From positions 124,001 through 188,000 of IMG/VR virus record IMGVR_UViG_3300034104_005687: a stretch of DNA of 64,000 bases; one strand, 5' to 3'. The notes under the pieces are model-generated. The model was not told where the DNA came from, ran no database searches, and saw only the letters and a program-made list of their open reading frames with translations. Below are positions 31,206 through 53,187 of the stretch, piece after piece. The stretch's first letter is position 1, and every line of letters begins with the position of its first letter. Position numbers and translations under genes: made by a program.

Positions 31206-31967
31206 ATGAAAGCATTTATAATTTACCTACCCGAACGAGAACACAGTGTTCAACATTCCAAGCTCATGCTAGATCAACTCAAAGAGTACAACATTGACGC
31301 TGAACTATTTGAAGGTACACCTGGTGATCAAGCAGTTGCCATGGCAGCAAAAGCCAAAAAAACATTGTATCCTTACAGTATCAAAAATCGTGTGTTGGAC
31401 AAACACGACATTGAACAACTGATACGCCCTGAACTGTACGAAGAATTCAAAAAGAAACATCGTTATGAAATCATTGAACGACAGTTGATCGGAGAAAAAG
31501 ACGTGGGCAAACTGAGTCGCCCCGGGGTAATTGGCTGTTTCTACAGTCACTACAACTTGTGGAAAAAGTGTGTGGAACTCAAAGAGCCCATTATGATTTT
31601 TGAGGATGATGTCAAGTTCTATCGTGGCTACCATCCTGTGGAATTCGACGGTGTGTTGATTCTGAGCTTGGGCAAGAGCTCGTTCATGACTGAGCCACAA
31701 AAAACCTACTTGGAAAACCCCACAGGTACCCCGTCGGCTCGTAAGTGGCAAAACTTCAGCATGCCTGGCGCCAGCGGCTATGCTATTATGCCCGATGCTG
31801 CTCTTGCCTTGGTCAAGTTTTATCGACCCTACTGGTATCCAGCAGACAATGCTATCAATCAGTTTGTGGTACCTGTGAAGATCAGCAACTATATCATGGG
31901 TCGCAATACCTTGCCTGAAGAAGGCAATGTATCCATGACCAAATCCAAGGACTGGGTCAAAGAATGA
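31206..31967 (+). CDS. glycosyltransferase family 25-like
   Basis: AFIIYL..R, GCFYSHY.LWKK, IFEDDV, GY.I.P.AA..L. Confidence 0.8.
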   Translation: MKAFIIYLPEREHSVQHSKLMLDQLKEYNIDAELFEGTPGDQAVAMAAKAKKTLYPYSIKNRVLDKHDIEQLIRPELYEEFKKKHRYEIIERQLIGEKDVGKLSRPGVIGCFYSHYNLWKKCVELKEPIMIFEDDVKFYRGYHPVEFDGVLILSLGKSSFMTEPQKTYLENPTGTPSARKWQNFSMPGASGYAIMPDAALALVKFYRPYWYPADNAINQFVVPVKISNYIMGRNTLPEEGNVSMTKSKDWVKE

Positions 31968-33668: not shown

Positions 33669-34517
33669 ATGAAAATTGCTTATTTTCCCGAACAAGTTGC
33701 ACTCAATGGCGCACCTGTGATGGAAGCAGTGTTGGACTGTTTGCAGGCTGCTGGACATCAAACTCAAGAAAACTCACTGAACTCAGACGCCGCGGTGATA
33801 TGGTCAGTGTTGTGGCACGGACGCATGGCCCCAAATCAAGCAGTGTATCATCACTACAGAGCACAGAACCGGCCAGTGATCATTGTGGAAGTGGGTGCAC
33901 TGTATCGTGGCAACACCTGGAAGATAGCTGTGAACAATGTCACTGCTGAAGGTTACTACGGGCACACTGACAATCTGGACTGGGACCGTCCTCACAAATT
34001 AGGCATCAGCTTGGCCACACAAACTCAGCCTGCTGAACACATTGTGATAGCTTTGCAACACACTCACAGTCATCAAGTGGCTGCTGTGCCCAACATGACA
34101 CAATGGATACAAAACACTGTGGCCACACTGCGAAACCATACAGACCGGCCCATTGTAGTAAGGCCACACCCAAGATGTCGTACAGCGTTGCCACCGTTGC
34201 CCAACAATGTCACTGTGCAACAACCACAACGGGTGATCAACACCTATGACAGTTACAATCTGCACTATAATTGCCATGCTGTGGTCAACTACAATTCAGG
34301 GCCAGGAATTCAAGCCGCCATTGCTGGCGTTCGTCCTGTGGTTGATGTCAGCAGTTTGGCACATCCTGTGGGCGTAGACGTTGCACAAATTGAGCAGCCT
34401 TATGTGACAGACCGAGATCTATGGCTTACTCAGATTTGTCACACAGAATACACAGTGGATGAAATAAAAAAAGGATCATGGCTATCAAGAATCGCCCCAT
34501 CATTACAGGCCCCATAG
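33669..34517 (+). CDS. capsule-polysaccharide-synthesis-like protein (paralogue of 31964)
   Basis: IVIALQ, VVRPHP, AVVNYNSGPGIQAAIAGV. Confidence 0.5.
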   Translation: MKIAYFPEQVALNGAPVMEAVLDCLQAAGHQTQENSLNSDAAVIWSVLWHGRMAPNQAVYHHYRAQNRPVIIVEVGALYRGNTWKIAVNNVTAEGYYGHTDNLDWDRPHKLGISLATQTQPAEHIVIALQHTHSHQVAAVPNMTQWIQNTVATLRNHTDRPIVVRPHPRCRTALPPLPNNVTVQQPQRVINTYDSYNLHYNCHAVVNYNSGPGIQAAIAGVRPVVDVSSLAHPVGVDVAQIEQPYVTDRDLWLTQICHTEYTVDEIKKGSWLSRIAPSLQAP

Positions 34518-35215
34518 ACTGTGCCTGTGTAATACACAGCAACGGCTATGACTGGACCTATGTTGACCGACTGTACAACATGTTGAGTCGTCAAATCACT
34601 GCTGGCATACGTTTTCATGTGTACACTGAAGCAGACCGATACGTTCCGCCACACATGATCAAGCACTGTCTTGAAGAATGGCCCGAAGTCAGAGGTCCCA
34701 AACGGTCTTGGTGGTACAAGATGCAGTTGTTCAATCCTGCACACTTTGGCGGAAATCTGCTGTATTTGGATCTGGACGTGGTAGTGTTCAACAGCCTTGA
34801 TTGGGTCACAGCATCCAACCCAGATTATTTTTGGACCATACGAGATTTCAGATATCTACAGCATACCTGTAGTTCCATGAATTCCAGCATGATGTGGTGG
34901 AATGTTGGTCAATATGCCTGGGTATGGGACCAGTTCTGCCTGGAATCTCGCGACACAGTGATACGGCGACACCATGGCGACCAAGACTACATCAACAGTG
35001 TGATCACACCAAAGCACAAACGTTTTTGGCCAGATCAGCATTTTCAAAGTTGGCGTTGGCAATGCCAAGAAGGCGGATACGATTTCCCGCGACGTCGACA
35101 TCGTGCTCCTGGTGCCGCGGCACACGTTGATCCTGATGCTAGTGTGATAGTATTTCACGGTCAACCAAAACCGCACCAAATCAATGATCCTATAGTGCAG
35201 GCACACTGGTGTTGA
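34478..35215 (+). CDS. GT-A fold glycosyltransferase-like (paralogue of 29441)
   Basis: RFHVYTE, WWYKMQLF, LYLDLDVV, NSSMMWW, GDQDY, VFHGQPKP. Confidence 0.65.
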   Translation: MAIKNRPIITGPIDCACVIHSNGYDWTYVDRLYNMLSRQITAGIRFHVYTEADRYVPPHMIKHCLEEWPEVRGPKRSWWYKMQLFNPAHFGGNLLYLDLDVVVFNSLDWVTASNPDYFWTIRDFRYLQHTCSSMNSSMMWWNVGQYAWVWDQFCLESRDTVIRRHHGDQDYINSVITPKHKRFWPDQHFQSWRWQCQEGGYDFPRRRHRAPGAAAHVDPDASVIVFHGQPKPHQINDPIVQAHWC

Positions 35216-38275: not shown

Positions 38276-38302
38276 GACTTGATAGTCACAACAATATATA
38301 CT
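38274..38302 (+). promoter_or_regulatory. sigma70 promoter TTGACT-17-TATACT
   Basis: The ATG at 38309 follows 6 nt after the -10. Confidence 0.75.
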
Positions 38303-38308
38303 ACAGTT

Positions 38309-39175
38309 ATGAGCATTTTGTATATTGAGCTTGAAGATCTGACATTGCAATTTCATGTGTTGGCCACACCTGTAGCAGAGCTGTGGCAAGAGAGAATGAG
38401 TCAACGCCATGCTTGGCCCTTGGATCACCCTCGACGTTTCTACGGTTTTGACAGTGCCAAAACAGAAGCAGATCGTGCATTGACAGAAATTAATCGTTGT
38501 GTAACCATCATCAATCAGTACCAGCACATTGCAGACCGTGCATTGACAGATGTGCATGATCAAGACACCCTGAACTATCTGCACAATATCTTTGAACGAT
38601 ATCACGGCCTGTTGGATCAGCAGAACAGTGAATACTGGATGTCTGCTCCTGATTGGGTTCGGACCGCACTGGCTGATCTCAACTTGGCTGTACACCGATG
38701 TGAAACTGCTCAGTCTGCACCGACCCCTAGGCTGGTGTGTACCTGGTATGGACAACCCAAACAACACACCTTGCCTCTGACTGTACAACAACAATACGGT
38801 ACTGTGAACCCTCCCTGGGGTAGTGTGTGTTTGAACTATTGCGAAATAGGCAAGACTCTAGAAGATCTTGCCAGAGACAATGATCGCTACATTGGAGATG
38901 ATGCATTTCGTCCATTCTCGTACTACAGCAGTGACTTTGTGGTGAGATTTTTTGAATACGACACACCAGCACTTGACAAAACCCATGCAAGTATGCAACA
39001 ATACTACTCAACACACCGTGAGTTTTTTCACAATCGTGGGTTTGAATCTTTTGACAACACGCAACTACAACCATTGCGGTTTCCGGTGGCACAGCTGATA
39101 GAGACCATGCCACGAGATCAATTGTTGCAGGAAATAGCAGTCAGACAACAAGTGACAAATATACATATACAATGA
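38309..39175 (+). CDS. hypothetical protein
   Basis: Long ORF coupled to uvsW, with an internal ADRALT(E/D) duplication. Start moved from 38279 because the promoter lies inside that extension. Confidence 0.7.
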   Translation: MSILYIELEDLTLQFHVLATPVAELWQERMSQRHAWPLDHPRRFYGFDSAKTEADRALTEINRCVTIINQYQHIADRALTDVHDQDTLNYLHNIFERYHGLLDQQNSEYWMSAPDWVRTALADLNLAVHRCETAQSAPTPRLVCTWYGQPKQHTLPLTVQQQYGTVNPPWGSVCLNYCEIGKTLEDLARDNDRYIGDDAFRPFSYYSSDFVVRFFEYDTPALDKTHASMQQYYSTHREFFHNRGFESFDNTQLQPLRFPVAQLIETMPRDQLLQEIAVRQQVTNIHIQ

Positions 39176-42944: not shown

Positions 42945-43672
42945 TCGAGCAGTTAGTGGTCAATGGTTGTAGCTACATGGAAACCTATGCGTTTGGTGAC
43001 GGACATGTAGACCTAGCTGAACGACTGGACATTAGAACTCCCGCAGGTGCAATCAACGCAGTGAGCTTGGCCATTGGTGGCAGTGCCAACAGTCGCATCT
43101 TACGCACAGTACACAAGCACAGTTACAATCCAGGCTACAACACATTGTATGTGATGGGCATGACATTTGTAAGCCGTTTAGAAATTCCCATACTGGATGA
43201 TCGTGATCTGTTTGAAGGACGTTGGACCAATCCTCAAAATCAACAGTTTCAAAATCGTTGGATGCAGCATTGGACTACCAAAAATAGTGAACAGTATGTA
43301 GAGCTCAAGTTAAAGTATGAAAGCGACAGTATCCTGGATCGCACTGAAGATTTAATGTATCGTATCCTGGCCACAGTGGACAGTATAAAAATGCGCGGAC
43401 ATCGTGTGTTGGTATTTCAACAAGCTGACAATTTATATCAAGAAATACTGTCTGATGCCAGATTTGCCCCGATGCGCAATCGCCCAGAAATCATAAACGG
43501 GTTGGCCTGGCGAGCAGTGGCCTGGCAACATGAGCAAGGAGTACAGCCCACAATATACGCACCAGGCCATCCTTACGTACCGCCCGAAATGGTGCATCCA
43601 GCTGCCGGCCACCATCACATATTGAATCAATACTTGACAGACTACATCCAAGAGCATAAAATACTAGCATGA
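42941..43672 (+). CDS. SGNH/GDSL-like protein
   Basis: LVVNGCSY, LAIGGSANSRILR, C-terminal EMVHP. Confidence 0.5.
   Translation: MIEQLVVNGCSYMETYAFGDGHVDLAERLDIRTPAGAINAVSLAIGGSANSRILRTVHKHSYNPGYNTLYVMGMTFVSRLEIPILDDRDLFEGRWTNPQNQQFQNRWMQHWTTKNSEQYVELKLKYESDSILDRTEDLMYRILATVDSIKMRGHRVLVFQQADNLYQEILSDARFAPMRNRPEIINGLAWRAVAWQHEQGVQPTIYAPGHPYVPPEMVHPAAGHHHILNQYLTDYIQEHKILA
43634..43662 (+). promoter_or_regulatory. sigma70 promoter TTGACA-17-TAAAAT embedded in the 3' end of the SGNH-like gene
   Basis: Direct consensus match, 6 nt before the ATG at 43669. Confidence 0.75.
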
Positions 43673-44343
43673 GCTTTGTGTGTGAATATTGTAAAAAAAC
43701 ATTTGCACGTGAAAGCACCATTGTGGCTCACATGTGCGAACCCAAACGTCGACGCATGGAGCAGAGTGAGCGCGGTGTGCAGTTGGGCTTGCAGGCCTAT
43801 CTGCAGTTTTATCGCATGGTGCAAGGCGGCAGCAAAGCCAAGTCATTTGACGAGTTTGCAGACAGTCCTTACTACCGAGCATTTGTGAAGTTTGGACGTT
43901 ACTGTATAGATACTAGGGTAATAAATCCCCCACGCATGATTGATTGGTTGTTGAAGCACAACAAAAAAATTGACAACTGGTGTTCAGACAAAGTCTACAC
44001 TGAATACTTGCTGTATCACCTGCAACACGAAGCAGTGGATGATGCATTGACCAGAGCCATAGAGTTTGGTATAGAATGGGCTGAAAAGAATTCAGCACAA
44101 CCACAGGACTGTTTGAGATATGGCAACACCAATGCAGTGTGTTATGCAATCACTGCAGGTCGAATCAGTCCCTGGGCAATCTACAATTCAGAGTCGGGTC
44201 AGAAGTTCCTGGCCAGTCTACATCCTCAACAGGTAGAAATGATCTGGAGTTATATCAACAGCGACACCTGGTCACGTAGGTTTGCAGAGCGTCCAGAAGA
44301 TCAGACCTATGCACAAGAAATATTGACAAGAGCAGGATGGTAA
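43669..44343 (+). CDS. protein with N-terminal C2H2-type zinc finger
   Basis: F.CEYCKKTFARESTIVAHMC fits C-x2-C-x3-F-x5-(L/I)-x2-H. Confidence 0.65.
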   Translation: MSFVCEYCKKTFARESTIVAHMCEPKRRRMEQSERGVQLGLQAYLQFYRMVQGGSKAKSFDEFADSPYYRAFVKFGRYCIDTRVINPPRMIDWLLKHNKKIDNWCSDKVYTEYLLYHLQHEAVDDALTRAIEFGIEWAEKNSAQPQDCLRYGNTNAVCYAITAGRISPWAIYNSESGQKFLASLHPQQVEMIWSYINSDTWSRRFAERPEDQTYAQEILTRAGW

Positions 44344-44344
44344 C

Positions 44345-44692
44345 ATGATTAGAAATATCACAGGTGGCTACGGAATACACGTTGCAGGCAACGTTTACAA
44401 TTCACCTTACGTAGACATGTCTCGACCCAGTGCTGGCATGGTACGGTACAACGGCAACAATATTGAAGTGTATGATGGCAGCTCATGGTTGCCTATGACA
44501 TCGAGCTATCCACAGATTGAACTGGACAGCAAAACACAGGAAATCATACGTTGGGCACAAAACCGTATGGTCGAGGAAGAACGCATGAAGGCCCTGGCAG
44601 CTCAACATCCCACAGTGGCAGATGCACTGGCGGCACAACAACGAGCTGAAGAAGCTGTGCGTATTGCAGTGGCCCTGTGTGACGTAAAATGA
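44345..44692 (+). CDS. hypothetical protein
   Basis: 115 aa with GMVRYN...EVYDGSSW and a C-terminal coiled coil. Confidence 0.7.
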   Translation: MIRNITGGYGIHVAGNVYNSPYVDMSRPSAGMVRYNGNNIEVYDGSSWLPMTSSYPQIELDSKTQEIIRWAQNRMVEEERMKALAAQHPTVADALAAQQRAEEAVRIAVALCDVK

Positions 44693-45474
44693 GCGCAGAT
44701 ATTGATTTTCCGTTGATTTATTGCAACGGAGACAGCTACAGCAACGATGAGTATCATGTGTCGTTAACAAGGAAAACTTATGCCTATGTAGTTGGAGAAA
44801 ACTGTCACGGATTTGTTATCAATGCCGCGGTAAACGGCAGTTGCAATAGAAGAATTATTAGAACTTCTCTGCATGATTTGATCCTTCAACGGCAGCTGAA
44901 TCCTTTACAAAAAATAATTGCGCTAATCGGCCTGAGTTTTGAGTTGAGGTCTGAAATATGGGCGGACAACTTGCCTAGCCGTCGGCCTAGTGAGTCAAAC
45001 TTTGTAACGCACACTTTCAGCGGTCAACAGAACTGGAGAGAGAATCTATTAAACCATAAAAACATTGAATCTCTCAACAAGTATAAATTAGACACTAAGT
45101 TTTATGAAAAATTTAGCCAGGGCCGAGCATATTTTTTTAGCCCATATGCTGAAAGAATTAATTTACTTGCAGACTTGATTATGTTAAAATCAACTTTAGA
45201 CAGTATGAATATTGACTTTTTGATTTTTCAGGGACCTGCTGCTGAAAAATTAGAGAGCGACTATTTGCTAGATTTTTTTAAACAACAAATTGCAATGGAC
45301 CAACGAATTTTCGATCTAGAAACATTTGGATTTTGCGATTGGTCACATGAACAAAAGTTTACACCATTGGATTTTTTAGATCACCCAAAAATTGGTCACT
45401 ATGGCCCAGACGCACATCGTTCGTTTGCAAACACAATTCTGTTGCCTAAACTTAAAGAATTATCCATATTATGA
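44689..45474 (+). CDS. SGNH/GDSL-like protein (AT-rich insert)
   Basis: IYCNGDSYS, NAAVNGSCNRRIIR, C-terminal GHYGPDAH. Confidence 0.5.
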   Translation: MSADIDFPLIYCNGDSYSNDEYHVSLTRKTYAYVVGENCHGFVINAAVNGSCNRRIIRTSLHDLILQRQLNPLQKIIALIGLSFELRSEIWADNLPSRRPSESNFVTHTFSGQQNWRENLLNHKNIESLNKYKLDTKFYEKFSQGRAYFFSPYAERINLLADLIMLKSTLDSMNIDFLIFQGPAAEKLESDYLLDFFKQQIAMDQRIFDLETFGFCDWSHEQKFTPLDFLDHPKIGHYGPDAHRSFANTILLPKLKELSIL

Positions 45475-46040
45475 GTGCAGATATTGATTTGGATTTTGCT
45501 GATCGCAGTGCTGTGCTGAGTTTGATTCAGCATACTGCTGCACGACAAAGTGACGGGCGCCGTCACAATTCAGGAGTGTATGTCACAGACATTCCACAGG
45601 ATCCTGTGCATGGCTGTGCCGCAATAGACTACGAAACTGCAGAACAACGAGGCTATTTCAAACTGGACTTTTTGAACATGAGTGTGTACAGCTTGATTCA
45701 AACACCTGAACACTACGAAGCCATGCTGGCCGCAACTCCTCCATGGAGCCGACTGTGGACTGATGCTCAATGGGTTAGGCAACTAGCACACGTGGGCAAT
45801 TACTATGATTTGCTGAAAGAAATGAAGCCAGATTCAATACCAAGATTGGCTGCTTTTATATCAATTATTCGTCCGGGCAAAGCACACCTACAGAGACAAC
45901 CCTGGGATCAAGTGTTTGCATCAGTATGGGACGGAGACACCAGCCAAGGATACACATTCAAAAAAGCACATGCAATAAGTTACGCAGCTTTGGTGGCGTT
46001 GCACATGAATCTTCTCAATCCATCCGACGCACAAGCGTGA
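45471..46040 (+). CDS. miniature family-C (DnaE/PolIII-alpha-like) polymerase-fold protein
   Basis: DIDLDF, HNSGVYV, GYFKLDFL, IIRPG and GYTFKKAHAISYA match the DnaE palm and finger motifs in order. Confidence 0.8.
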   Translation: MSADIDLDFADRSAVLSLIQHTAARQSDGRRHNSGVYVTDIPQDPVHGCAAIDYETAEQRGYFKLDFLNMSVYSLIQTPEHYEAMLAATPPWSRLWTDAQWVRQLAHVGNYYDLLKEMKPDSIPRLAAFISIIRPGKAHLQRQPWDQVFASVWDGDTSQGYTFKKAHAISYAALVALHMNLLNPSDAQA

Positions 46041-46392
46041 TTGATTTTCGCTTGCTTTTTTTGCGAGCTATGTCTTGAAGGCTGCAGATTGGCCCGTGTA
46101 AAATTTCTAGATCTTTGTTGGAGAATGTGCGCAACGTGGATTTGAATCGATCCCAGTCGCCGCGCAGAAATATGTTTATGGGTATGCTGTGATTGCTTTC
46201 CCACCACCATTGTCCTGCCAGTTCTAAAAATTCCAGCTTGTCGGTTTGATTTTGTATGACCCCAAAGTCGTAGATAGTGGTCACGATCTCGTCGCGATTT
46301 TGTACTACTCCTATATACTCCACGTTGGCATAAACGCACAAGGTTATAAAAGGGTATTTTTCAGTTAGCTTTTTAAATATATTGTTACCCAT
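46015..46392 (-). CDS. hypothetical protein
   Basis: 125 aa from MGNNIFKK, divergent from 46414. Confidence 0.7.
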   Translation of the reverse strand: MGNNIFKKLTEKYPFITLCVYANVEYIGVVQNRDEIVTTIYDFGVIQNQTDKLEFLELAGQWWWESNHSIPINIFLRGDWDRFKSTLRTFSNKDLEILHGPICSLQDIARKKSKRKSITLVRRMD

Positions 46393-46413
46393 AAATACTG
46401 ATTGAGGATTCAC

Positions 46414-47484
46414 ATGTATTCATCCACCGTTTACTTATACCAACAAATTACCAGAGTGTTATTGATTGACACCGGCGGTGGCTATTTCACAGCGAGGTAC
46501 GACCCAGTGTATGCTAAACAACTAACCGTCAACAAAGGCGTTGACAACGTCTTCTTGTTTGAATTTATCAACCAAGATCAAAAACCAGTAAACATCACAG
46601 GCTCTAGTTTTGTGTTTAGACTGATGAATCAAACTGGTGATCGACTGATTGCTGAAAAAAATATGGAAATACTGAGTGCTACCACAGGCCGCGCAAAAGT
46701 GGTGCTGAACAGTGCAGACACCATAGACATCATTGCCCAACCTGGAAGCTACAGTATACAACGCACCTCTGGCAGCTATGTTCAGTCAGCATTTGTGGAC
46801 GACAATTCTGGTGCTCGGGGTAACTGCAACATTGTGGATTCAGTGTTTCCTGAGTTTGTGCCCAGCCAAGAACTTACCATTCCCACAATCTACGGCAAAG
46901 CACAGCAGTTACAACCCGGTCCCACAAACTATCCTGATTGGGCTCTGCAACCTCCTCCAGTCAACACCACACAAACCACAGAATTTTACAGCAGCGAACT
47001 ACCCACAAACGGACAACAGCTGACCACGGTCAGCATGGATCTGGATCATTACACTGGCACAATCAAAGCACAAGCAGCACAAGATTATCAAAGCATATGG
47101 TACGATGTCACTGAGAGTTATGAATTCTTTGATGACACAAGAACTTGGCACATGAACATTGCAGGATTTCACCCGTTGTTGCGACTGGCATTCAACAACA
47201 GCTTGGGATTTGGAGCAACAGCCAACGCCACAGTTACCAATGGTGTGGTCACTGCCATCACATTGACCAACGCAGGACAAGGCTATGTGGCTCCTCCTCG
47301 ACTGCAGATTTTGGGCAACGGTTCGGGAGCCCGAGCCACTACCACTATTGGCGACAACAGTCAAGTTTCTGGAATTACCATTGTAGACGGTGGATCAGGT
47401 TATTTGCCGTTGCAATACCAAAGCACAATTTCAGCCACGGTGCTGTTTGACACAGGTACAATCACTAATCTCCAATATCGTTGA
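46414..47484 (+). CDS. virion structural protein (baseplate upper/BppU-like N-terminus, beta-rich C-terminus)
   Basis: F.NQDQKPVNITG..F.F motif and VTAITLTNAGQGY / ITIVDGGSGY repeats. Late promoter at 46392-46397 and SD GAGG. Confidence 0.55.
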   Translation: MYSSTVYLYQQITRVLLIDTGGGYFTARYDPVYAKQLTVNKGVDNVFLFEFINQDQKPVNITGSSFVFRLMNQTGDRLIAEKNMEILSATTGRAKVVLNSADTIDIIAQPGSYSIQRTSGSYVQSAFVDDNSGARGNCNIVDSVFPEFVPSQELTIPTIYGKAQQLQPGPTNYPDWALQPPPVNTTQTTEFYSSELPTNGQQLTTVSMDLDHYTGTIKAQAAQDYQSIWYDVTESYEFFDDTRTWHMNIAGFHPLLRLAFNNSLGFGATANATVTNGVVTAITLTNAGQGYVAPPRLQILGNGSGARATTTIGDNSQVSGITIVDGGSGYLPLQYQSTISATVLFDTGTITNLQYR

Positions 47485-47515: not shown

Positions 47516-48499
47516 ATGCTTGATATTGTTCAATACCTACCTGCCAAACGCAAAGCCAGTCCCAGCGGGTGGGTCAGTTTTAATGCAGTATGTTGCCATC
47601 ACAACAGCAACAGCCCAGACCGACGATTACGAGGCGGAATCAAAGTCAATGAACAAGGTTGGAGCTATCACTGCTTCAACTGTGGATACACTGCTAGCTT
47701 TATCCTTGGCCGTACTGTAAGTTATAAGGCCCGTAGGCTCTTGAGCTGGTTGGGTGTACCTGACCGAGACATAGAATTGGCCAATTTGGAAAGTCTGCGT
47801 CATCGCAGTATCCACGGCATTGTGGAAGATCGGCAACGTGTGGCCAATATACTGCAGGGCATTGACTTTGAAGAACGTGACTTGCCACCAGCATCAGAAT
47901 TGATCACACAGGAACATCCCAAGTACTGGGACTATGTTCGTGATCGTCGGGTGCCCGAAGACTTTCCTGTGATGACACCCATACGTACCGATGGTGTTCA
48001 TTGGACCAGGCCTTGTGTGATTGTGCCGTTCACGCATGACAACAAGATTGTGGGCTACACAGCTAGATTTCTTGACGGCAAAAGACCCAAGTTTATCAGC
48101 GAACAACAACCTGGCTATGTGTTTGGCATAGATTTGCAACCGCCCAATTGGCAGCATGTGTTGGTCATGGAAGGCATATTTGATGCACTCAGCATTGGTG
48201 GTGTTGCGTTACTACACAATGAAATTAGTGATGCACAAGCCAAACTGATTCGTGGCATTGGACGAGAAGTTACTGTGGTGCCGGATCAAGATCGTGCAGG
48301 ACTGGAACTGATTGACAGAGCAGTGGAACTGGGATGGGCAGTGAGCATACCTGCCTGGGAAGATTGCAAAGACGTCAATGATGCTGTGAAGAAATACGGT
48401 CGACTTGGTACCTTGCTAACTATTATGCAGGCACGAGAAACCAGCAGAATCAAAATTGAATTAAGAAAGAAAGCCCTTGTTAAAAGAATACAACACTGA
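47516..48499 (+). CDS. gp61: DNA primase (Zn-ribbon plus TOPRIM)
   Basis: CCHH...HCFNCG, VMEGIFDA, VPDQD, CKDVND. Confidence 0.9.
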   Translation: MLDIVQYLPAKRKASPSGWVSFNAVCCHHNSNSPDRRLRGGIKVNEQGWSYHCFNCGYTASFILGRTVSYKARRLLSWLGVPDRDIELANLESLRHRSIHGIVEDRQRVANILQGIDFEERDLPPASELITQEHPKYWDYVRDRRVPEDFPVMTPIRTDGVHWTRPCVIVPFTHDNKIVGYTARFLDGKRPKFISEQQPGYVFGIDLQPPNWQHVLVMEGIFDALSIGGVALLHNEISDAQAKLIRGIGREVTVVPDQDRAGLELIDRAVELGWAVSIPAWEDCKDVNDAVKKYGRLGTLLTIMQARETSRIKIELRKKALVKRIQH

Positions 48500-49937
48500 A
48501 GTACAACGATTGTTTCTGGAAATGATGCTGGAAGACGCCAGCTCGTATGTGCGTGTTCAGAACATCTACAATCCAGAAAACTTTGATCGCAGTTTGCGCA
48601 AAGCAGCAGAGTTTATTAAAGAACACTCAGACAAGTACAAAACTCTGCCAGACCGCGCACAGATATCTGCGGCATGTGGTATCACATTGCAGTCTGTGCC
48701 TGAACTCAATGAAGGACACAACGAGTGGTTCATGGCAGAGTTTGAGAGCTTTACCAAGCGTCAAGAACTGGAACGTGCTATCTTGAAAGCAGCAGACTTG
48801 CTGGAAAAGGGCGAGTTTGATCCAGTGGAAAAACTGATCAAGGATGCTGTGCAGATCAGCTTGACCAAGGATATGGGCACAGACTACTTTGCTGATCCTG
48901 CAGGTCGTATCAACAAGTATTTCAATTCAGGTGGACAAGTTAGCACAGGATGGCCACAGATGGATCGATTGTTGTATGGTGGATTCAGTCGAGGCGAACT
49001 CAACATCTTTGCAGGTGGATCAGGATCAGGCAAGAGTCTGGTCATGATGAACATTGCGCTGAACTGGTTGCAACAAGGACTCAGTGGTGTGTATATCAGT
49101 CTTGAATTGAGTGAAGAACTAACCAGCCTACGAACTGATGCCATGCTGACCAGCATGAGCACCAAGGACATTCGCAAGGACATTGATTCAGCAGAGCTCA
49201 AGGTCAAGATAGCAGGCAAAAAAGCTGGCCAATATCGGGTCAAAGCCTTGCCAGCACAAAGCAACATCAACGACATTCGAAGCTATGTCAAAGAAGTGCA
49301 GATTCAAACAGGTATCCAAGTGGACTTTTTGATGATTGACTACCTGGACTTGTTGATGCCCGTGAGTGCAAAGGTCAGCCCCAATGACTTGTTTGTGAAA
49401 GACAAGTATGTGAGTGAAGAACTGCGTAACTTGGCCAAAGAGCTGGGTGTGTTAATGGTAACTGCAAGTCAGTTGAACCGTAGCGCAGTTGAAGAAATTG
49501 AATTTGATCACAGTCACATTAGTGGTGGTATTTCCAAGATCAACACAGCAGACAATGTGTTTGGTATCTTTACAAGTCGTGCTATGAAAGAGCGCGGCAA
49601 ATATCAAATACAATGTATGAAGAGTCGTAGTTCAACAGGTGTGGGACAAAAGATTGATCTTGAGTACAACATTGAAACCATGCGCATCACTGACGAAGGT
49701 GGCGAGGATGGTGATGCCAGCGGAGGGTTTGCCCGAAAACCCAGTTCCAACTTGATGGATTCCATCAAAGCTAAGTCAACGGTGGCAACAGAAAATGCAC
49801 CAACTAAATGGGAAAAACCCACTGGCACACATGCCTGGGACAAACCAATGGTTCATTCAGATGATACTTCTAAGGTAACTGCTGATGTACAGAGCGCCAA
49901 ACTCAAACAGTTGTTGGGCAAGATCAAATCAGGTTAA
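48477..49937 (+). CDS. gp41: replicative DnaB-family helicase (TTG start)
   Basis: GGSGSGKS, ISLEL, MIDYLDL, TASQLNR, KSRSSTG. Confidence 0.92.
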   Translation: MLKEYNTEVQRLFLEMMLEDASSYVRVQNIYNPENFDRSLRKAAEFIKEHSDKYKTLPDRAQISAACGITLQSVPELNEGHNEWFMAEFESFTKRQELERAILKAADLLEKGEFDPVEKLIKDAVQISLTKDMGTDYFADPAGRINKYFNSGGQVSTGWPQMDRLLYGGFSRGELNIFAGGSGSGKSLVMMNIALNWLQQGLSGVYISLELSEELTSLRTDAMLTSMSTKDIRKDIDSAELKVKIAGKKAGQYRVKALPAQSNINDIRSYVKEVQIQTGIQVDFLMIDYLDLLMPVSAKVSPNDLFVKDKYVSEELRNLAKELGVLMVTASQLNRSAVEEIEFDHSHISGGISKINTADNVFGIFTSRAMKERGKYQIQCMKSRSSTGVGQKIDLEYNIETMRITDEGGEDGDASGGFARKPSSNLMDSIKAKSTVATENAPTKWEKPTGTHAWDKPMVHSDDTSKVTADVQSAKLKQLLGKIKSG

Positions 49938-51255: not shown

Positions 51256-53187
51256 ATGAACATTTTCGAAGGCGGCAACGTATTCAAAGACAAAATGGGC
51301 GTACCGCTCACTCGTCGTATCAAACAGGGCGAAATTGCCGGCACCATCAAATGGTTGGAATCTGTAACAGGGCTGGATTTGCACGGTGTCAATGACCCAG
51401 GCACAAACTACCCCGTGAAATGGCTGGGCAGCACCGGCAAAAAAGACGACTCGGGCGATCTTGATCTAGCAGTGGAGTTGTCAGACACTACCAAGCCTGA
51501 ACTCAAGGCACACCTGGACAGTTATGTGTCTGGACAAAAGCAAGATCCCCGAGATTTTGTGCGTCTCAGTGGCGAAGCAGTGCATTTCAAAACGCCCATA
51601 TTGGGCGATGCCAACAATGGATTTGTGCAAACAGATTTCATGTTCATGCCCAACATCGACTGGGGTTCTTTTTTCTTGGCTGGCGGCACAGACTCCCAGT
51701 ACAAGGGCATGTTTAGAAATGTGCTGATGAGCTCCATTGCCAAGTCTCAAGGACTCAAAGCCAGTGCCAAGGGCATTACCAGTCGTACCACAGACAGTGT
51801 GATCACCATGGATCCAGATCGTGCTGCTGAAATGCTGCTGGGACAGGGCATGAAGCGTGGCAACTTGAAAAACGTTGAAAGCATCTACACAGCCTTGGCC
51901 AATCACCCTGATCGTGACGCCAAACTCAAAGACTTTAGAGAATACCTGGCCAGAGAAGGTGTCAAAGAGCCCAGCACAGTGGCCGAAAGTGATGTGAACT
52001 TTTTGTCCCGACTGCGTGATCGCATTGTGAATCAAGGCATGGCGCCCTTGATCGAAGCTGGCTCAGCAAACCCGTATCAACTGTACGAAGCTGAAGCGGC
52101 TGGTGTTGGCGGCAGAGCCAAGGGCATCGAGCACCTGGAAGACCTGGTGTTCAGAAACGGCGCAGCTGGCATTAGCCAAGCACTGACCATTGCACAACAG
52201 GCCACTGAACAGCCCAGCACAGTCACTGCCAAGTGGGACGGCAAACCTGCTGTGATCTGGGGCCGCAAACCCGCCACAGGTGAGTTTGTGCTCACAGACG
52301 GATCAGGATTTGAAGCCAAGAGCTACGACGGTCTTGCTACCAGCCCGCGCATGATGGCAGACATTCAGAATCGACGATCTGGCGAACGCTCAGGCCTGAT
52401 ACAGTTGTATGCCACACTGTGGCCTGCACTAGAAGCCAGTTTGCCGCCCAACTTCCGTGGTTATGTCAAAGGCGACTTGCTGTACACAGACACGCCGCCT
52501 GTGGAAGCCGGAAACTATGTGTTCCGTCCCAATACTATAGAATACAAAATTCCAGTTCGCAGTGCCTTGGGACAACGCATTGGAGCCAGCAACATTGGCA
52601 TTGCAGTTCACAGCATGTATGCAGACACAGGCGAAGCCCGACAACCACTCAGCGGGGTCAAATTCAACGAAGTTCCGGGACTGATGCTGGAACGCCCAGC
52701 CACACCTTCAGCACTGGTACTGGACAAAAACATAGTGCAACAGCTCAAGACCATTGTGAGATCACAAGGTGCCAACATGAAAGTGCTGTTTAATCCTGCT
52801 GAACTGCGTGCTCAACAAGTCACAGATCTGTTTAGATTGGCAGTGGATTTTATCAACACCAAGGTAGGCGGTCCCTTGGAACCAGCTAACCAGTTAATTG
52901 TGGAGTTTGGAGAATGGCTGCAAGGGCGAGTAACACCGCGCAAGTTCAACAACATTGTGGAATATCTCAAAAACCCCAGTACAAACCAGGAAGCACTGAG
53001 TGCGGCGTTTTTGGCATTTGAATTGCTGCATGCACTCAAAACAGACCTATTGCGTCAAGCAGACACTCAGCATCCTGGGCAAGAAGGCTGGGTAATGGCC
53101 ACGCCTGCAGGCTATGCCAAAGCAGTAAATCGCTTTGATCCCAATGCTTTTGCTGCTCAAAATCGAGCCAGAAATAACCCCAACTGA
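51256..53187 (+). CDS. PolX/Pol-beta-like nucleotidyltransferase fused to a covalent-NTase (ligase-fold, KxDG) domain
   Basis: N-terminal LGSTGKKDDSGDLDLAV, VQTDFMF and YKGMFRN..M..IAK.QG. C-terminal AKWDGKPA, YVKGDLL, QEGWV, YAKAV. Confidence 0.65.
   Translation: MNIFEGGNVFKDKMGVPLTRRIKQGEIAGTIKWLESVTGLDLHGVNDPGTNYPVKWLGSTGKKDDSGDLDLAVELSDTTKPELKAHLDSYVSGQKQDPRDFVRLSGEAVHFKTPILGDANNGFVQTDFMFMPNIDWGSFFLAGGTDSQYKGMFRNVLMSSIAKSQGLKASAKGITSRTTDSVITMDPDRAAEMLLGQGMKRGNLKNVESIYTALANHPDRDAKLKDFREYLAREGVKEPSTVAESDVNFLSRLRDRIVNQGMAPLIEAGSANPYQLYEAEAAGVGGRAKGIEHLEDLVFRNGAAGISQALTIAQQATEQPSTVTAKWDGKPAVIWGRKPATGEFVLTDGSGFEAKSYDGLATSPRMMADIQNRRSGERSGLIQLYATLWPALEASLPPNFRGYVKGDLLYTDTPPVEAGNYVFRPNTIEYKIPVRSALGQRIGASNIGIAVHSMYADTGEARQPLSGVKFNEVPGLMLERPATPSALVLDKNIVQQLKTIVRSQGANMKVLFNPAELRAQQVTDLFRLAVDFINTKVGGPLEPANQLIVEFGEWLQGRVTPRKFNNIVEYLKNPSTNQEALSAAFLAFELLHALKTDLLRQADTQHPGQEGWVMATPAGYAKAVNRFDPNAFAAQNRARNNPN

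What the first reader, a model, noticed from the sequence alone, without database searches (positions are those of the whole stretch)
45471..46040. 189-aa 'mini-DnaE' that keeps the catalytic triad but lacks PHP, thumb, most fingers and the OB domain
Seen, in order: ADIDLDF, RSAVLSLI, HNSGVYV, AEQRGYFKLDFL, MKPDSIPRLAAFISIIRPG, GYTFKKAHAISYA. Established: these match DnaE PDFDVDF (D401/D403 in E. coli), HAGGVVI, GLVKFDFL (D555), ALFRPG and GYGFNKSH. Full DnaE is over 1000 aa. Here the protein starts three residues before the first catalytic Asp, and the thumb between DIDLDF and HNSG is absent. The ORF is intact, coupled to its neighbours and lies in the replication cluster (clamp-loader-like, primase, helicase). 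Inference: this is a maintained enzyme rather than a decayed fragment. It could be a distributive or template-independent nucleotidyltransferase, a primer-maturation factor, or half of a split polymerase whose partner lies outside the window.
Basis: partly seen in the sequence, partly recalled or inferred. Interest (0 to 1): 0.72.

Follow-up and report, generated by a model that had tools for sequence, protein, structure and literature searches.

The report
Half of a split mini-DnaE polymerase
This 189-residue gene of an uncultured lake-water jumbo phage is the catalytic C-terminal half of a two-piece, stripped-down DnaE-type DNA polymerase whose other half lies 87 kb away. The system was predicted by comparative genomics in 2021 and, as far as I could find, has never been tested biochemically.

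Summary
Window 45471..46040 (+) is an intact 189-aa ORF carrying the DnaE catalytic motifs in order.

- **Not a self-sufficient enzyme.** It is the C-terminal half of a minimal Pol III alpha catalytic core. The N-terminal half (172 aa, invariant GVGRGS dNTP-phosphate loop) is encoded 87.3 kb downstream, outside the window. It ends exactly where this ORF begins on the DnaE sequence.
- **Evidence for one enzyme.** Both halves co-occur in 93-96 cultured jumbo phages, always far apart. Natural fused 375-376-aa forms exist. The predicted heterodimer scores 0.90, against 0.00 for controls.
- **Fold.** The fused model superimposes on Taq, Mycobacterium tuberculosis and PolC polymerases at Z 21-22.
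- **Selection.** D4, D6, K64, D66 and P135 are invariant in 77 diverse sequences. The steric-gate His is kept in 76 of 77. dN/dS is about 0.12.
- **Ruled out.** Intein, intron and pseudogene explanations are all ruled out.
- **Rest of the genome.** It has a separate 912-aa family-B polymerase and no PHP, beta-binding or other DnaE parts.
- **Novelty.** Iyer et al. 2021 (PMC7824862) already described this split minimal Pol III of "group 2.2" jumbo phages. This is a new member of a known, still untested kind. New here are the re-fused natural form, the exactly conserved split point and the selection and structure tests.

The parts
45471..46040 (+). C-terminal half ('C-piece', 189 aa) of the split minimal Pol III alpha-like polymerase. 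It carries the Mg2+-binding catalytic residues and reduced fingers. Its partner N-piece (172 aa) lies OUTSIDE the window at G000:C1:257340-257858 (+) = L001:1201-1719, 87.3 kb downstream.
   Evidence: ORF. phrog_11778 'DNA polymerase', E 9e-52, full length. Profile hits only Pol III alpha in PDB. Model pLDDT 94.9 with best fold matches Pol III alpha. dN/dS 0.07-0.12. Predicted heterodimer with the N-piece: ipSAE 0.90, best of 3 controls 0.00.
45477..45497 (+). A-D-I-D-L-D-F: catalytic DxDxD strand (D4, D6, D8 = E. coli D401, D403, D405)
   Evidence: D4 and D6 are 77/77 invariant, D8 75/77. Aligned to E. coli 399-417. Residues 3-10 lie in the predicted interface with the N-piece.
45660..45668 (+). 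K64-L65-D66: third catalytic Asp (E. coli D555) and the conserved Lys (K553)
   Evidence: K64 and D66 are 77/77 invariant. Aligned to E. coli 553-555.
45870..45878 (+). R134-P135-G136 finger motif (E. coli R639-P640-G641)
   Evidence: R 75/77, P 77/77. Alignment.
45957..45971 (+). F163-K-K-A-H167 finger helix. H167 corresponds to E. coli H760, the proposed sugar steric gate.
   Evidence: H 76/77, K164 71/77, K165 62 K + 13 R of 77. Alignment to E. coli 756-760. Steric-gate role of H760: PMC8485763.
46015..46413 (-). Conserved small opposite-strand ORF (132 aa, phrog_11637, function unknown). It overlaps the 3' end of the C-piece by 26 nt.
   Evidence: A homologue is present on the minus strand in 70 of 71 related IMG/VR loci with room for it, in PA5oct and 121Q, and downstream of the fused gene.
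46402..47484 (+). Virion structural protein (360 aa) in the conserved block
   Evidence: PHROG structural hits. The orthologous position is MS-confirmed structural in PA5oct and annotated virion structural in 121Q. Found in 69 of 80 loci.
47516..48499 (+). DnaG/Toprim-type DNA primase (327 aa)
   Evidence: Toprim_2 above cut-off; phrog_47, E 9e-32. Present downstream of the C-piece in 44 of 45 loci with room.
48477..49937 (+). DnaB-like replicative helicase (486 aa)
   Evidence: DnaB_C, E 3e-21; phrog_19, E 6e-72.
43669..44343 (+). Conserved upstream neighbour: 224-aa protein with an N-terminal C2H2-like zinc finger (phrog_11058)
   Evidence: Found in 74 of 80 related loci and 16 of 16 MAG-binned phage loci.
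44689..45474 (+). 261-aa ORF immediately upstream with an ATGA overlap. It is a lineage-specific insertion and not part of the conserved system.
   Evidence: No family hit. A homologue is present in only 5 of 73 related loci. A relative's contig skips 44706->45513. The overlap was read directly.

Best explanation
The ORF encodes the C-terminal half of a two-chain, minimal C-family (Pol III alpha / DnaE-like) nucleotidyltransferase. This enzyme is characteristic of 'group 2.2' jumbo phages.

The half in the window supplies three elements: the metal-binding DxDxD strand, the third catalytic Asp, and a drastically shortened finger module that still carries the RPG motif and the FKK(S/A)H helix with the steric-gate His. 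The other half is a 172-aa protein encoded 87.3 kb downstream. It supplies the first part of the Pol-beta-type palm, including the invariant GVGRGS loop that binds the triphosphate of the incoming nucleotide.

The two polypeptides are made separately and assemble non-covalently. The N-piece C-terminus abuts the C-piece N-terminus, which rebuilds one catalytic domain equivalent to E. coli alpha residues ~272-773 without the thumb and most of the fingers. No intein, intron or RNA joining is involved.

Shown: the split, its exact conservation, co-occurrence, purifying selection, the fold, and a confident predicted interface.

Inferred: the assembled enzyme is an active, dNTP-using, template-directed polymerase that is non-proofreading and poorly processive. 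It would serve as an auxiliary to the phage's 912-aa family-B replicase. Given the conserved linkage of the C-piece to primase and helicase, the most likely site of action is the primosome or lagging strand, or gap-filling and repair.
For: Split and partner:
- PF07733 matches a second ORF at G000:C1:257640-257852, above the curated cut-off.
- That ORF ends '...EFLR-stop'. Its profile aligns to E. coli alpha 320-393, while the C-piece profile starts at 399.

Co-occurrence and conserved split:
- The C-piece is in 96 phage records and the N-piece in 93, from the same phage groups and 31-224 kb apart.
- All 80 IMG/VR N-pieces stop at the identical position, with no C-piece within 3 kb. No N-piece lies within 4 kb of 80 C-piece loci.
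- Each half sits in its own conserved block.

Rosetta stone:
- Three independent fused proteins of 375-376 aa join the halves through a 9-10-residue linker.

Assembly:
- ipSAE is 0.90 in 3 runs, against 0.00 for the best of 3 controls. In the tool's calibration, 58 of 80 solved complexes and 2 of 110 mismatched pairs reached the mark; the counts hold only roughly because own alignments were used.
- The interface joins the GVGRGS loop and N-piece C-terminus to the DxDxD strand and the FKKAH helix.

Fold:
- Fused model pLDDT 85.6.
- The 18 best Foldseek hits are all C-family polymerases.
- VIA Z is 22.2 to Taq and M. tuberculosis Pol III alpha and 21.2 to PolC, with ~290 residues at 3.0-3.5 A. 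The next fold scores Z 4.

Selection:
- D4, D6, K64, D66 and P135 are 77/77; H167 is 76/77; GVGRGS is 60/60.
- Median dN/dS is 0.12 over 252 pairs, and 0.07 for the window's gene against its nearest relatives.

Genome context:
- A family-B polymerase is present in a 912-aa frame.
- There is no PHP, no HHH_6 beta-binding domain and no further finger domain.

Literature:
- The same system was predicted by Iyer et al. 2021, PMC7824862.
- H760 is the steric gate, PMC8485763.
Against: No biochemical or genetic data exist for any member.

Expression of either half could not be shown. No RNA run holds the locus, and the relatives' 'RNA' libraries are probably DNA.

The complex score may partly reflect the model's memory of the intact DnaE palm. 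It shows likeness, not binding.

The enzyme lacks the thumb, most of the fingers and the beta-binding/HhH and OB domains that hold primer-template DNA in cellular Pol III. Templated synthesis may therefore need unknown partners, or may not be the real activity.

No clamp-binding motif was recognised, and no sliding clamp was detected with PF02916.

Three phage records had a C-piece hit without an N-piece hit at E<=1e-5 (96 vs 93). This was not examined and is probably a sensitivity effect.
Confidence: 0.82

Rival explanations
1. The two halves do form one enzyme, but its real activity is not templated DNA synthesis. It could be a template-independent or specialised nucleotidyltransferase, like other Pol-beta-fold enzymes: 3'-end tailing, a nucleotide second messenger, or modification of DNA ends for counter-defence.
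For: The thumb, most of the fingers and all DNA-duplex/clamp-binding domains are missing. The palm belongs to the Pol-beta NTase superfamily, which includes many non-templated transferases; Cid1, CCA-adding enzyme and MenT are weak fold matches at Z 2-4. The genome already has a complete family-B replicase.
Against: The retained finger elements are exactly those that contact the incoming dNTP and template in Pol III: RPG and the FNKSH helix. H167 = H760, the deoxyribose steric gate, is kept in 76/77. Structural similarity to C-family polymerases (Z 21-22) far exceeds that to any other NTase (Z<=4). There is conserved linkage to primase and helicase.
Confidence: 0.13
2. The 189-aa protein is a self-sufficient miniature enzyme that works without the N-piece.
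For: On its own it is predicted to fold confidently (pLDDT 94.9). It carries all three catalytic Asp residues.
Against: It lacks the first half of the palm, with the invariant GRGS phosphate-binding loop. That half is conserved as a separate gene in the same phages. About 155 confident inter-chain contacts are predicted, many through residues 3-10, 60-63 and 164-167 around the active site. Natural fusions join the two.
Confidence: 0.03
3. It is an exon or extein of an ordinary DnaE, joined to its partner by protein trans-splicing (a split intein, as in cyanobacterial DnaE) or by RNA splicing.
For: Split DnaE genes joined by split inteins are known in cyanobacteria (own knowledge). The two pieces abut precisely on the DnaE sequence.
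Against: The N-piece stops 0-1 residue after the conserved EFL motif, and the C-piece starts 1-10 residues before DxD. There is no room for the ~100-aa plus ~35-aa intein halves. No Hint/intein family hit in either protein. The pieces are 31-224 kb apart, with the C-piece upstream of the N-piece on the same strand. Even when joined the product is only ~360 aa, and no PHP, beta-binding or OB parts exist anywhere in the 97%-complete genome.
Confidence: 0.01
4. It is a decaying pseudogene fragment of a once full-length phage DnaE.
For: It is very short relative to DnaE, and single-sequence searches barely recognise it.
Against: dN/dS is 0.07-0.12. Catalytic residues are invariant across 29-63% identity. 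There are 5,940 clusters of the same ~189-aa length in metagenomes. 87 representatives at 50% identity are 177 aa or longer, almost all of them 177-233 aa. Synteny is conserved.
Confidence: 0.005

Closest known systems
Split minimal DNA polymerase III alpha of group 2.2 jumbo phages (predicted by Iyer, Anantharaman, Krishnan, Burroughs & Aravind 2021, Viruses 13:63, PMC7824862)
   Same: It matches in every defining respect. There are two stand-alone proteins from distant genes. The N-terminal one is the NTP-binding subdomain, and the C-terminal one is the Mg2+- and template-binding subdomain. A family-B polymerase accompanies them, and no other Pol III domains are present. Orthologues of both halves occur in the paper's group 2.2 phages, e.g. 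Atu_ph07, 121Q/PBECO4-like and PA5oct.
   Different: Nothing fundamental. This copy is from an uncultured lake-water phage, at most 44% identical to any cultured phage's copy. Not in that paper, and added here: natural re-fused 375-376-aa forms, the exactly conserved split point, dN/dS, the predicted heterodimer interface, retention of the steric-gate His, and the very large environmental abundance.
Bacterial C-family replicases: DnaE (Pol III alpha) and PolC
   Same: It has the same Pol-beta-type palm with three catalytic Asp residues, the GRGS phosphate loop, and the RPG and FNKSH finger motifs including the steric-gate His. About 290 residues superimpose at Z 14-22.
   Different: It totals ~360 aa in two chains, against 1,100-1,450 aa in one. 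There is no PHP domain, no real thumb, about 100 aa of the fingers deleted, and no beta-clamp-binding/HhH, OB or tau-binding domains. It is not the only or main polymerase of its genome. It is found only in phage DNA: the 16 hits in 185,579 species genomes are all mis-binned phage contigs in MAGs.
Cyanobacterial split-intein DnaE (DnaE-n / DnaE-c joined by protein trans-splicing; own knowledge)
   Same: It is a dnaE-type gene divided into two distant genes whose products must come together.
   Different: It has no intein halves or Hint domain. The split site is different, inside the palm between the GRGS loop and the DxD strand. The product is a minimal core, not a full replicase. Assembly must be non-covalent.
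Bacillus subtilis DnaE as primer-extending second polymerase beside PolC, and eukaryotic Pol alpha (functional analogy only; own knowledge)
   Same: A second, non-proofreading polymerase accompanies the main replicase. The C-piece is genetically linked to primase and helicase, which would fit a primer-extension/hand-off role.
   Different: No functional data exist. T4-type family-B replicases can extend RNA primers themselves (own knowledge), so such a role is not required a priori.
Other Pol-beta-fold nucleotidyltransferases (Cid1/TUTases, poly(A) polymerases, CCA-adding enzyme, MenT toxins, ANT)
   Same: They share the core NTase palm topology. Weak structural matches cover ~85-100 residues.
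   Different: Z is only 2-4, against 14-22 for C-family polymerases. They lack the DnaE-specific finger motifs.

Membership tests
Split minimal Pol III alpha of group 2.2 jumbo phages (Iyer et al. 2021) | [quoted passage not shown] | tested here: met
   The C-piece is at G000 169471-170040 and the N-piece at 257340-257858, 87.3 kb apart on the same strand. There is no adjacency in 80 + 80 related loci.
Split minimal Pol III alpha of group 2.2 jumbo phages (Iyer et al. 2021) | N-terminal protein = NTP-binding subdomain of the Pol III alpha palm | tested here: met
   PF07733 scores 26.2 bits against a cut-off of 23.9. The profile aligns to E. coli 320-393. GVGRGS is invariant.
Split minimal Pol III alpha of group 2.2 jumbo phages (Iyer et al. 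2021) | C-terminal protein = Mg2+-binding and template-binding subdomain | tested here: met
   The DxDxD motif and third Asp are invariant, and the RPG and FKKxH finger motifs are conserved.
Split minimal Pol III alpha of group 2.2 jumbo phages (Iyer et al. 2021) | Accompanied by a family-B DNA polymerase; no other Pol III alpha domains in the genome | tested here: met
   PolB lies in a 912-aa open frame. PHP, HHH_6 and extra finger domains are not found in a 97%-complete genome.
Split minimal Pol III alpha of group 2.2 jumbo phages (Iyer et al. 2021) | Host genome is a group 2-type jumbo myovirus (gp23-type capsid, T4-like primase/helicase/UvsW set) | tested here: met
   The record is 349 kb. 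Gp23 capsid protein, E 1.6e-97. Toprim primase, DnaB-like helicase and UvsW-like helicase are present. A GroES-like gene lies next to the N-piece. The sliding clamp was not detected with PF02916 (inconclusive). The sigma factor was not tested.
Split minimal Pol III alpha of group 2.2 jumbo phages (Iyer et al. 2021) | The two proteins reconstitute one active enzyme | not testable with these tools
   Only indirect support is available: natural fusions and a predicted complex at 0.90 against 0.00 for controls. No assay exists in the literature searched.
C-family replicative DNA polymerase (DnaE/PolC) | Pol-beta-type palm with three catalytic carboxylates and a GS phosphate-binding loop | tested here: met
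   Met only by the two chains together.
C-family replicative DNA polymerase (DnaE/PolC) | N-terminal PHP domain | tested here: not met
   There is no PF02811 match anywhere in the genome, while the control rings in 14 of 14 reference genomes.
C-family replicative DNA polymerase (DnaE/PolC) | Thumb and complete fingers domains | tested here: not met
   About 35 aa replace the ~120-aa thumb, and about 10 aa replace ~100 aa of fingers. Nothing lies beyond E. coli ~773.
C-family replicative DNA polymerase (DnaE/PolC) | Beta-clamp-binding/HhH and OB domains; role as the genome's main replicase | tested here: not met
   No HHH_6 match. A separate family-B polymerase is present.
Split-intein DnaE | Intein N- and C-fragments (Hint domain) flanking the split | tested here: not met
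   No intein/Hint hit. The N-piece ends right after EFL(R/K) in 80 of 80 loci. The C-piece starts 3 residues before DxD.

The most novel reading that the evidence does not exclude
The two-chain mini Pol III is the phage's dedicated primer-extension polymerase, a Pol-alpha-like or B. subtilis DnaE-like enzyme. In this reading it is physically coupled to the neighbouring primase/helicase, takes over the RNA primer, lays down a short DNA stretch and hands off to the family-B replicase. Group 2.2 jumbo phages would then run a hybrid replisome in which a bacterial-type (C-family) and an archaeo-eukaryotic-type (B-family) polymerase divide the labour. At ~360 aa it would also be the smallest known functional C-family polymerase core, and a model for the ancestral enzyme.
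Probability: 0.2. Interest if true: 0.8.

Novelty: new member of a known kind. Interest (0 to 1): 0.45.

Why it matters
If active, this is the smallest natural C-family polymerase: about 360 residues in two chains, or 375 in the natural fused form. It contains little more than the nucleotidyltransferase palm and a stub of the fingers.

It would define the minimal catalytic unit of the bacterial replicase family. It also bears on whether Pol III grew by accretion around such a core or whether phages reduced it. And it would show a replisome that combines B- and C-family polymerases.

The family is very abundant in nature: thousands of 90%-identity clusters in metagenomes, and it is present in therapeutic-candidate jumbo phages such as PA5oct and the 121Q/PBECO4 group. 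No experiment on it was found in the literature searched.

The naturally fused variant and the well-defined split point give ready-made constructs for biochemistry and for split-protein engineering.

For the scan itself, the lesson is that the 'odd short DnaE' is explained by a partner gene outside the window and by a 2021 paper.

Tried and rejected
- **Single-sequence searches.** Both halves against PDB found nothing. Profiles were needed.
- **Megablast.** 12 kb around the ORF against phage records gave no near relative.
- **First complex job.** Those sequences were not sent anywhere else. The job was rebuilt from own-genome, IMG/VR and protein-search sequences only (A4, A5).
- **Alignment A6.** The combined fused + N + C alignment was mis-registered by MAFFT, with N-pieces laid on the C half. 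It was discarded and replaced by A7, which was checked.
- **Genome-contig scan with A5.** It failed for lack of a conserved stretch and was repeated with the smaller A8.
- **DnaQ proofreader as obligatory partner.** 121Q has an RNase_T-family gene in the block. This genome has no PF00929 match, and the positional ORF is unrelated. Rejected as a universal partner.
- **Expression evidence.** No RNA run holds the locus. Contigs from four 'RNA' libraries at 80% likeness belong to relatives and are mostly flagged as probably DNA, so they are no evidence of transcription. The PA5oct supplements are not held, and its main text does not mention these genes.
- **P0267.** This 229-aa apparent N-terminal extension is a frameshifted or miscalled ORF, not a fusion.
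- **N-terminal motif of the N-piece.** Its conserved 'DKFGQxIF' was considered as a clamp-binding peptide. It is a beta-hairpin that lies in the predicted interface with the C-piece, so this was rejected.
- **Sliding clamp.** Not detected with PF02916. Inconclusive.
Full report
**Observation**

Window 45471..46040 (+) is an intact ATG-initiated ORF of 189 codons.

The start codon overlaps the stop of the upstream ORF (ATGA). That upstream 261-aa gene is a lineage-specific insert: a homologue is found in only 5 of 73 related loci, and one relative's contig skips it.

A Toprim primase (47516..48499) and a DnaB-like helicase (48477..49937) follow within 2.5 kb. A UvsW-like helicase and an AAA+ ATPase lie 5-9 kb upstream.

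The window is bases 124001-188000 of a 349,369-bp viral record estimated 97% complete. The phage is from lake water, and its locus is held nearly word for word in at least 24 DNA runs listed under different coded sample and study ids. No cultured phage is close at the DNA level.

**Is the DnaE likeness real?**

Single-sequence methods barely see it. Pfam gives 12.5 bits, and phmmer against PDB finds nothing. The ORF is, however, a full-length member of phrog_11778 (E 9e-52).

A profile of 77 diverse homologues (29-63% identity) hits only Pol III alpha chains in the PDB (E 1.3e-5). The hits form three collinear blocks: E. coli 399-417, 539-641 and 739-769. This maps the residues as follows:

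| Window ORF | E. coli alpha |
|---|---|
| D4 / D6 / D8 | D401 / D403 / D405 |
| K64 / D66 | K553 / D555 |
| R134-P135-G136 | R639-P640-G641 |
| K165 / A166 / H167 | K758 / S759 / H760 |

The thumb shrinks to about 35 residues, about 100 finger residues shrink to about 10, and nothing follows E. coli residue ~773.

An AlphaFold model of the ORF alone is confident (pLDDT 94.9). Its best structural matches are Pol III alpha.

**The missing half**

Searching the phage's own genome with PF07733 found a second ORF at G000:C1:257640-257852. Its true product is 172 aa, because homologues are almost all called at that length; it runs L001:1201-1719. It scores above Pfam's cut-off for DNA_pol3_alpha and belongs to phrog_11127.

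It carries the invariant GVGRGS loop and ends '...EFLR-stop'. Its profile aligns to E. coli alpha 320-393, six residues before the point where the window's ORF picks up. The gene is therefore cut inside the palm, between the phosphate-binding loop and the DxD strand, and the two pieces lie 87.3 kb apart on the same strand.

The genome has no PHP domain, no HHH_6 beta-binding domain and no further finger domain. It does encode a separate family-B polymerase in a 912-aa frame and a gp23-type capsid protein.

**One enzyme in two chains: the evidence**

1. *Co-occurrence.* tblastn finds the C-piece in 96 and the N-piece in 93 phage records of the same lineages (PA5oct-like, Phosso, Atu_ph07, 121Q/PBECO4/Rak2-like and others). 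The two are always 31-224 kb apart.
2. *Fixed split point.* All 80 IMG/VR N-pieces end at the identical EF(L/I)(R/K)-stop, and none has a C-piece within 3 kb. None of 80 C-piece loci has an N-piece within 4 kb.
3. *Separate conserved neighbourhoods.* The C-piece block runs Zn-finger protein, C-piece, small opposite-strand ORF, structural protein, primase, helicase. The opposite-strand ORF is present in 70 of 71 loci and primase in 44 of 45, and the order holds in PA5oct and 121Q. The N-piece block runs N-piece, small ORF, GroES-like co-chaperonin, with a clamp loader further on in 121Q and Atu_ph07.
4. *Natural fusion.* An exhaustive search of 1.84 billion representatives returned one 375-aa protein (P0172). 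Its residues 82-180 match the N-piece (E 5e-14) and its residues 190-373 match the window's ORF. Two further clusters at 78-81% identity come from other samples. A 9-10-residue linker joins EFIK to ADFDID.
5. *Predicted complex.* ipSAE was 0.90 in three runs, against 0.00 for the best of three controls. In the tool's calibration, 58 of 80 solved complexes and 2 of 110 mismatched pairs reached the mark; these counts hold only roughly because my own alignments were used. About 155 confident contacts link N-piece residues 133-146 and 169-172 to ORF residues 3-10, 60-63 and 164-167. This shows likeness to the intact palm and supports binding, but does not prove it.
6. *Fold.* The fused protein models confidently (pLDDT 85.6, pTM 0.83). 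Its 18 best Foldseek hits are all C-family polymerases. VIA-align gives Z 22.2 to Taq and M. tuberculosis Pol III alpha, 21.2 to PolC and 14-16 to E. coli alpha 272-773, with ~290 residues at ~3-3.5 A. The next fold scores Z 4.

**Maintained, not decaying**

- D4, D6, K64, D66 and P135 are invariant in 77 sequences.
- D8 and R134 are kept in 75 of 77, and H167 in 76 of 77.
- GVGRGS is invariant in 60 of 60.
- Nei-Gojobori dN/dS has a median of 0.12 over 252 unsaturated pairs. It is 0.07 for the window's gene against its closest relatives.
- The metagenome protein collection holds 5,940 C-piece clusters at 90% identity and at least 7,989 N-piece clusters, of nearly uniform length.
- Among 185,579 species genomes only 16 loci match. 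All are in MAGs of unrelated phyla, and all carry the phage gene block, so they are mis-binned phage DNA. On this evidence the family is viral only.

**Alternatives excluded**

- *Intein or intron joining.* There is no room and no Hint domain, the distances are tens of kilobases, and even the joined product is only ~360 aa.
- *Pseudogene.* Excluded by the selection data above.
- *A self-sufficient 189-aa enzyme.* Very unlikely, because the phosphate-binding half of the active site is on the other chain.

**Likely function (inferred)**

The retained elements are the ones that bind metal, the triphosphate, the sugar and the template. [quoted passage not shown] This favours a dNTP-using, template-directed polymerase over an rNTP or untemplated transferase.

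Loss of PHP, thumb, clamp-binding and OB domains predicts no proofreading and low intrinsic processivity. A DnaQ-type exonuclease is present in 121Q but absent here, so it is not a fixed partner.

With a full family-B replicase present, an auxiliary role is most plausible. Candidates are primer extension or hand-off at the primosome (suggested by the conserved primase/helicase linkage), gap filling, or repair. Iyer et al. likewise suggested one-strand synthesis or repair. A specialised non-templated activity remains possible (about 0.13).

**Comparison with what is known**

Iyer et al. [quoted passage not shown] They locate it in group 2.2 jumbo phages, next to a family-B polymerase. The present locus meets every defining feature of that system. 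GenBank and PHROG annotations of orthologues already say 'DNA polymerase' or 'DnaE-like'.

I found no experimental follow-up. That paper does not mention fused forms.

In an ML tree the fused clade (support 100/100) is nested inside well-supported clades of ordinary split C-pieces (99/82, 99/89, 99/88). The gene downstream of the fused gene is the same conserved opposite-strand ORF (E 9e-5). So the fusion is probably a secondary re-joining at the C-piece locus. The tree is unrooted and its bootstrap had not fully settled, so this is provisional.

**Verdict**

The thing itself is a new member of a kind already described in silico. Interest is moderate (0.45). It is no longer a discovery, but it is an untested, abundant and unusually small polymerase core, for which this analysis supplies constructs and sharp predictions.

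Noticed in passing
L007:1066-2193 (protein P0172); also P0271, P0272: These are natural unsplit mini-DnaE proteins of 375-376 aa, in three clusters at 78-81% identity from different samples. The N- and C-halves are joined by a 9-10-residue linker. They are nested among split forms in the tree, so this is probably a secondary re-fusion. Iyer et al. 2021 do not mention them.
   Followed up: yes
window 46015-46413 (-): This 132-aa ORF (phrog_11637, function unknown) converges on the C-piece and overlaps its 3' end by 26 nt. It is conserved in this position and orientation in 70 of 71 related loci, in PA5oct and 121Q, and next to the fused gene. It is a possible functional partner or regulator.
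   Followed up: partly
window 43669-44343 (+): This 224-aa protein has an N-terminal C2H2-like zinc finger (phrog_11058). It is conserved just upstream of the C-piece in 74 of 80 IMG/VR loci and 16 of 16 MAG loci. It might be the stand-alone primase-type zinc-binding protein that Iyer et al. mention for group 2 phages.
   Followed up: partly
window 44689-45474 (+): This 261-aa ORF has no family match and is translationally overlapped (ATGA) with the C-piece. It is present in only 5 of 73 relatives, so it is a recent insertion between conserved genes.
   Followed up: partly
L173-L188 (genome contigs): Sixteen MAGs of unrelated phyla carry contigs with this jumbo-phage gene block. They include a Natrialbaceae archaeon, a Pacearchaeota archaeon, Elusimicrobia and Marinimicrobia. 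These are almost certainly phage contigs mis-binned into the MAGs.
   Followed up: yes
L172:2629-3447 (phage 121Q gene 9) vs window 38279-39175: 121Q has a DnaQ/RNase_T-type exonuclease just upstream of its UvsW-like helicase in the syntenic block. The ORF at the equivalent place in the window (298 aa) is unrelated and has no family match. The whole genome lacks a PF00929 match.
   Followed up: yes
L001:1147-1719 (G000:C1:257286-257858): Mechanical ORF calling gives the N-piece a 190-aa TTG start. Homologues (mostly 172 aa) and the conserved 'M-x-x-D-K-F-G' start show that the real start is the ATG at L001:1201, which overlaps the upstream gene by 11 nt.
   Followed up: yes
window 31206-31967 (+) and 34478-35215 (+): Two glycosyltransferase genes lie here: Glyco_transf_25 (E 1.6e-16) and phrog_1962 glycosyltransferase (E 1.3e-24). 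They are flanked by short opposite-strand ORFs in a lower-GC stretch. This may be a DNA- or surface-modification module.
   Followed up: no
window 51256-53187 (+): A 643-aa protein whose C-terminal 340 residues match DUF6267 (E 8e-30). It lies just downstream of the helicase.
   Followed up: no
proteins P0284 (540 aa) and P0285 (551 aa): These are short PHP + DNA_pol3_alpha proteins weakly similar to the fused mini-DnaE (E 6e-6 and 8.6e-4). P0284 fills its short contig and may be cut by it. P0285 sits on a 16-kb contig and could be another truncated or split DnaE type.
   Followed up: no
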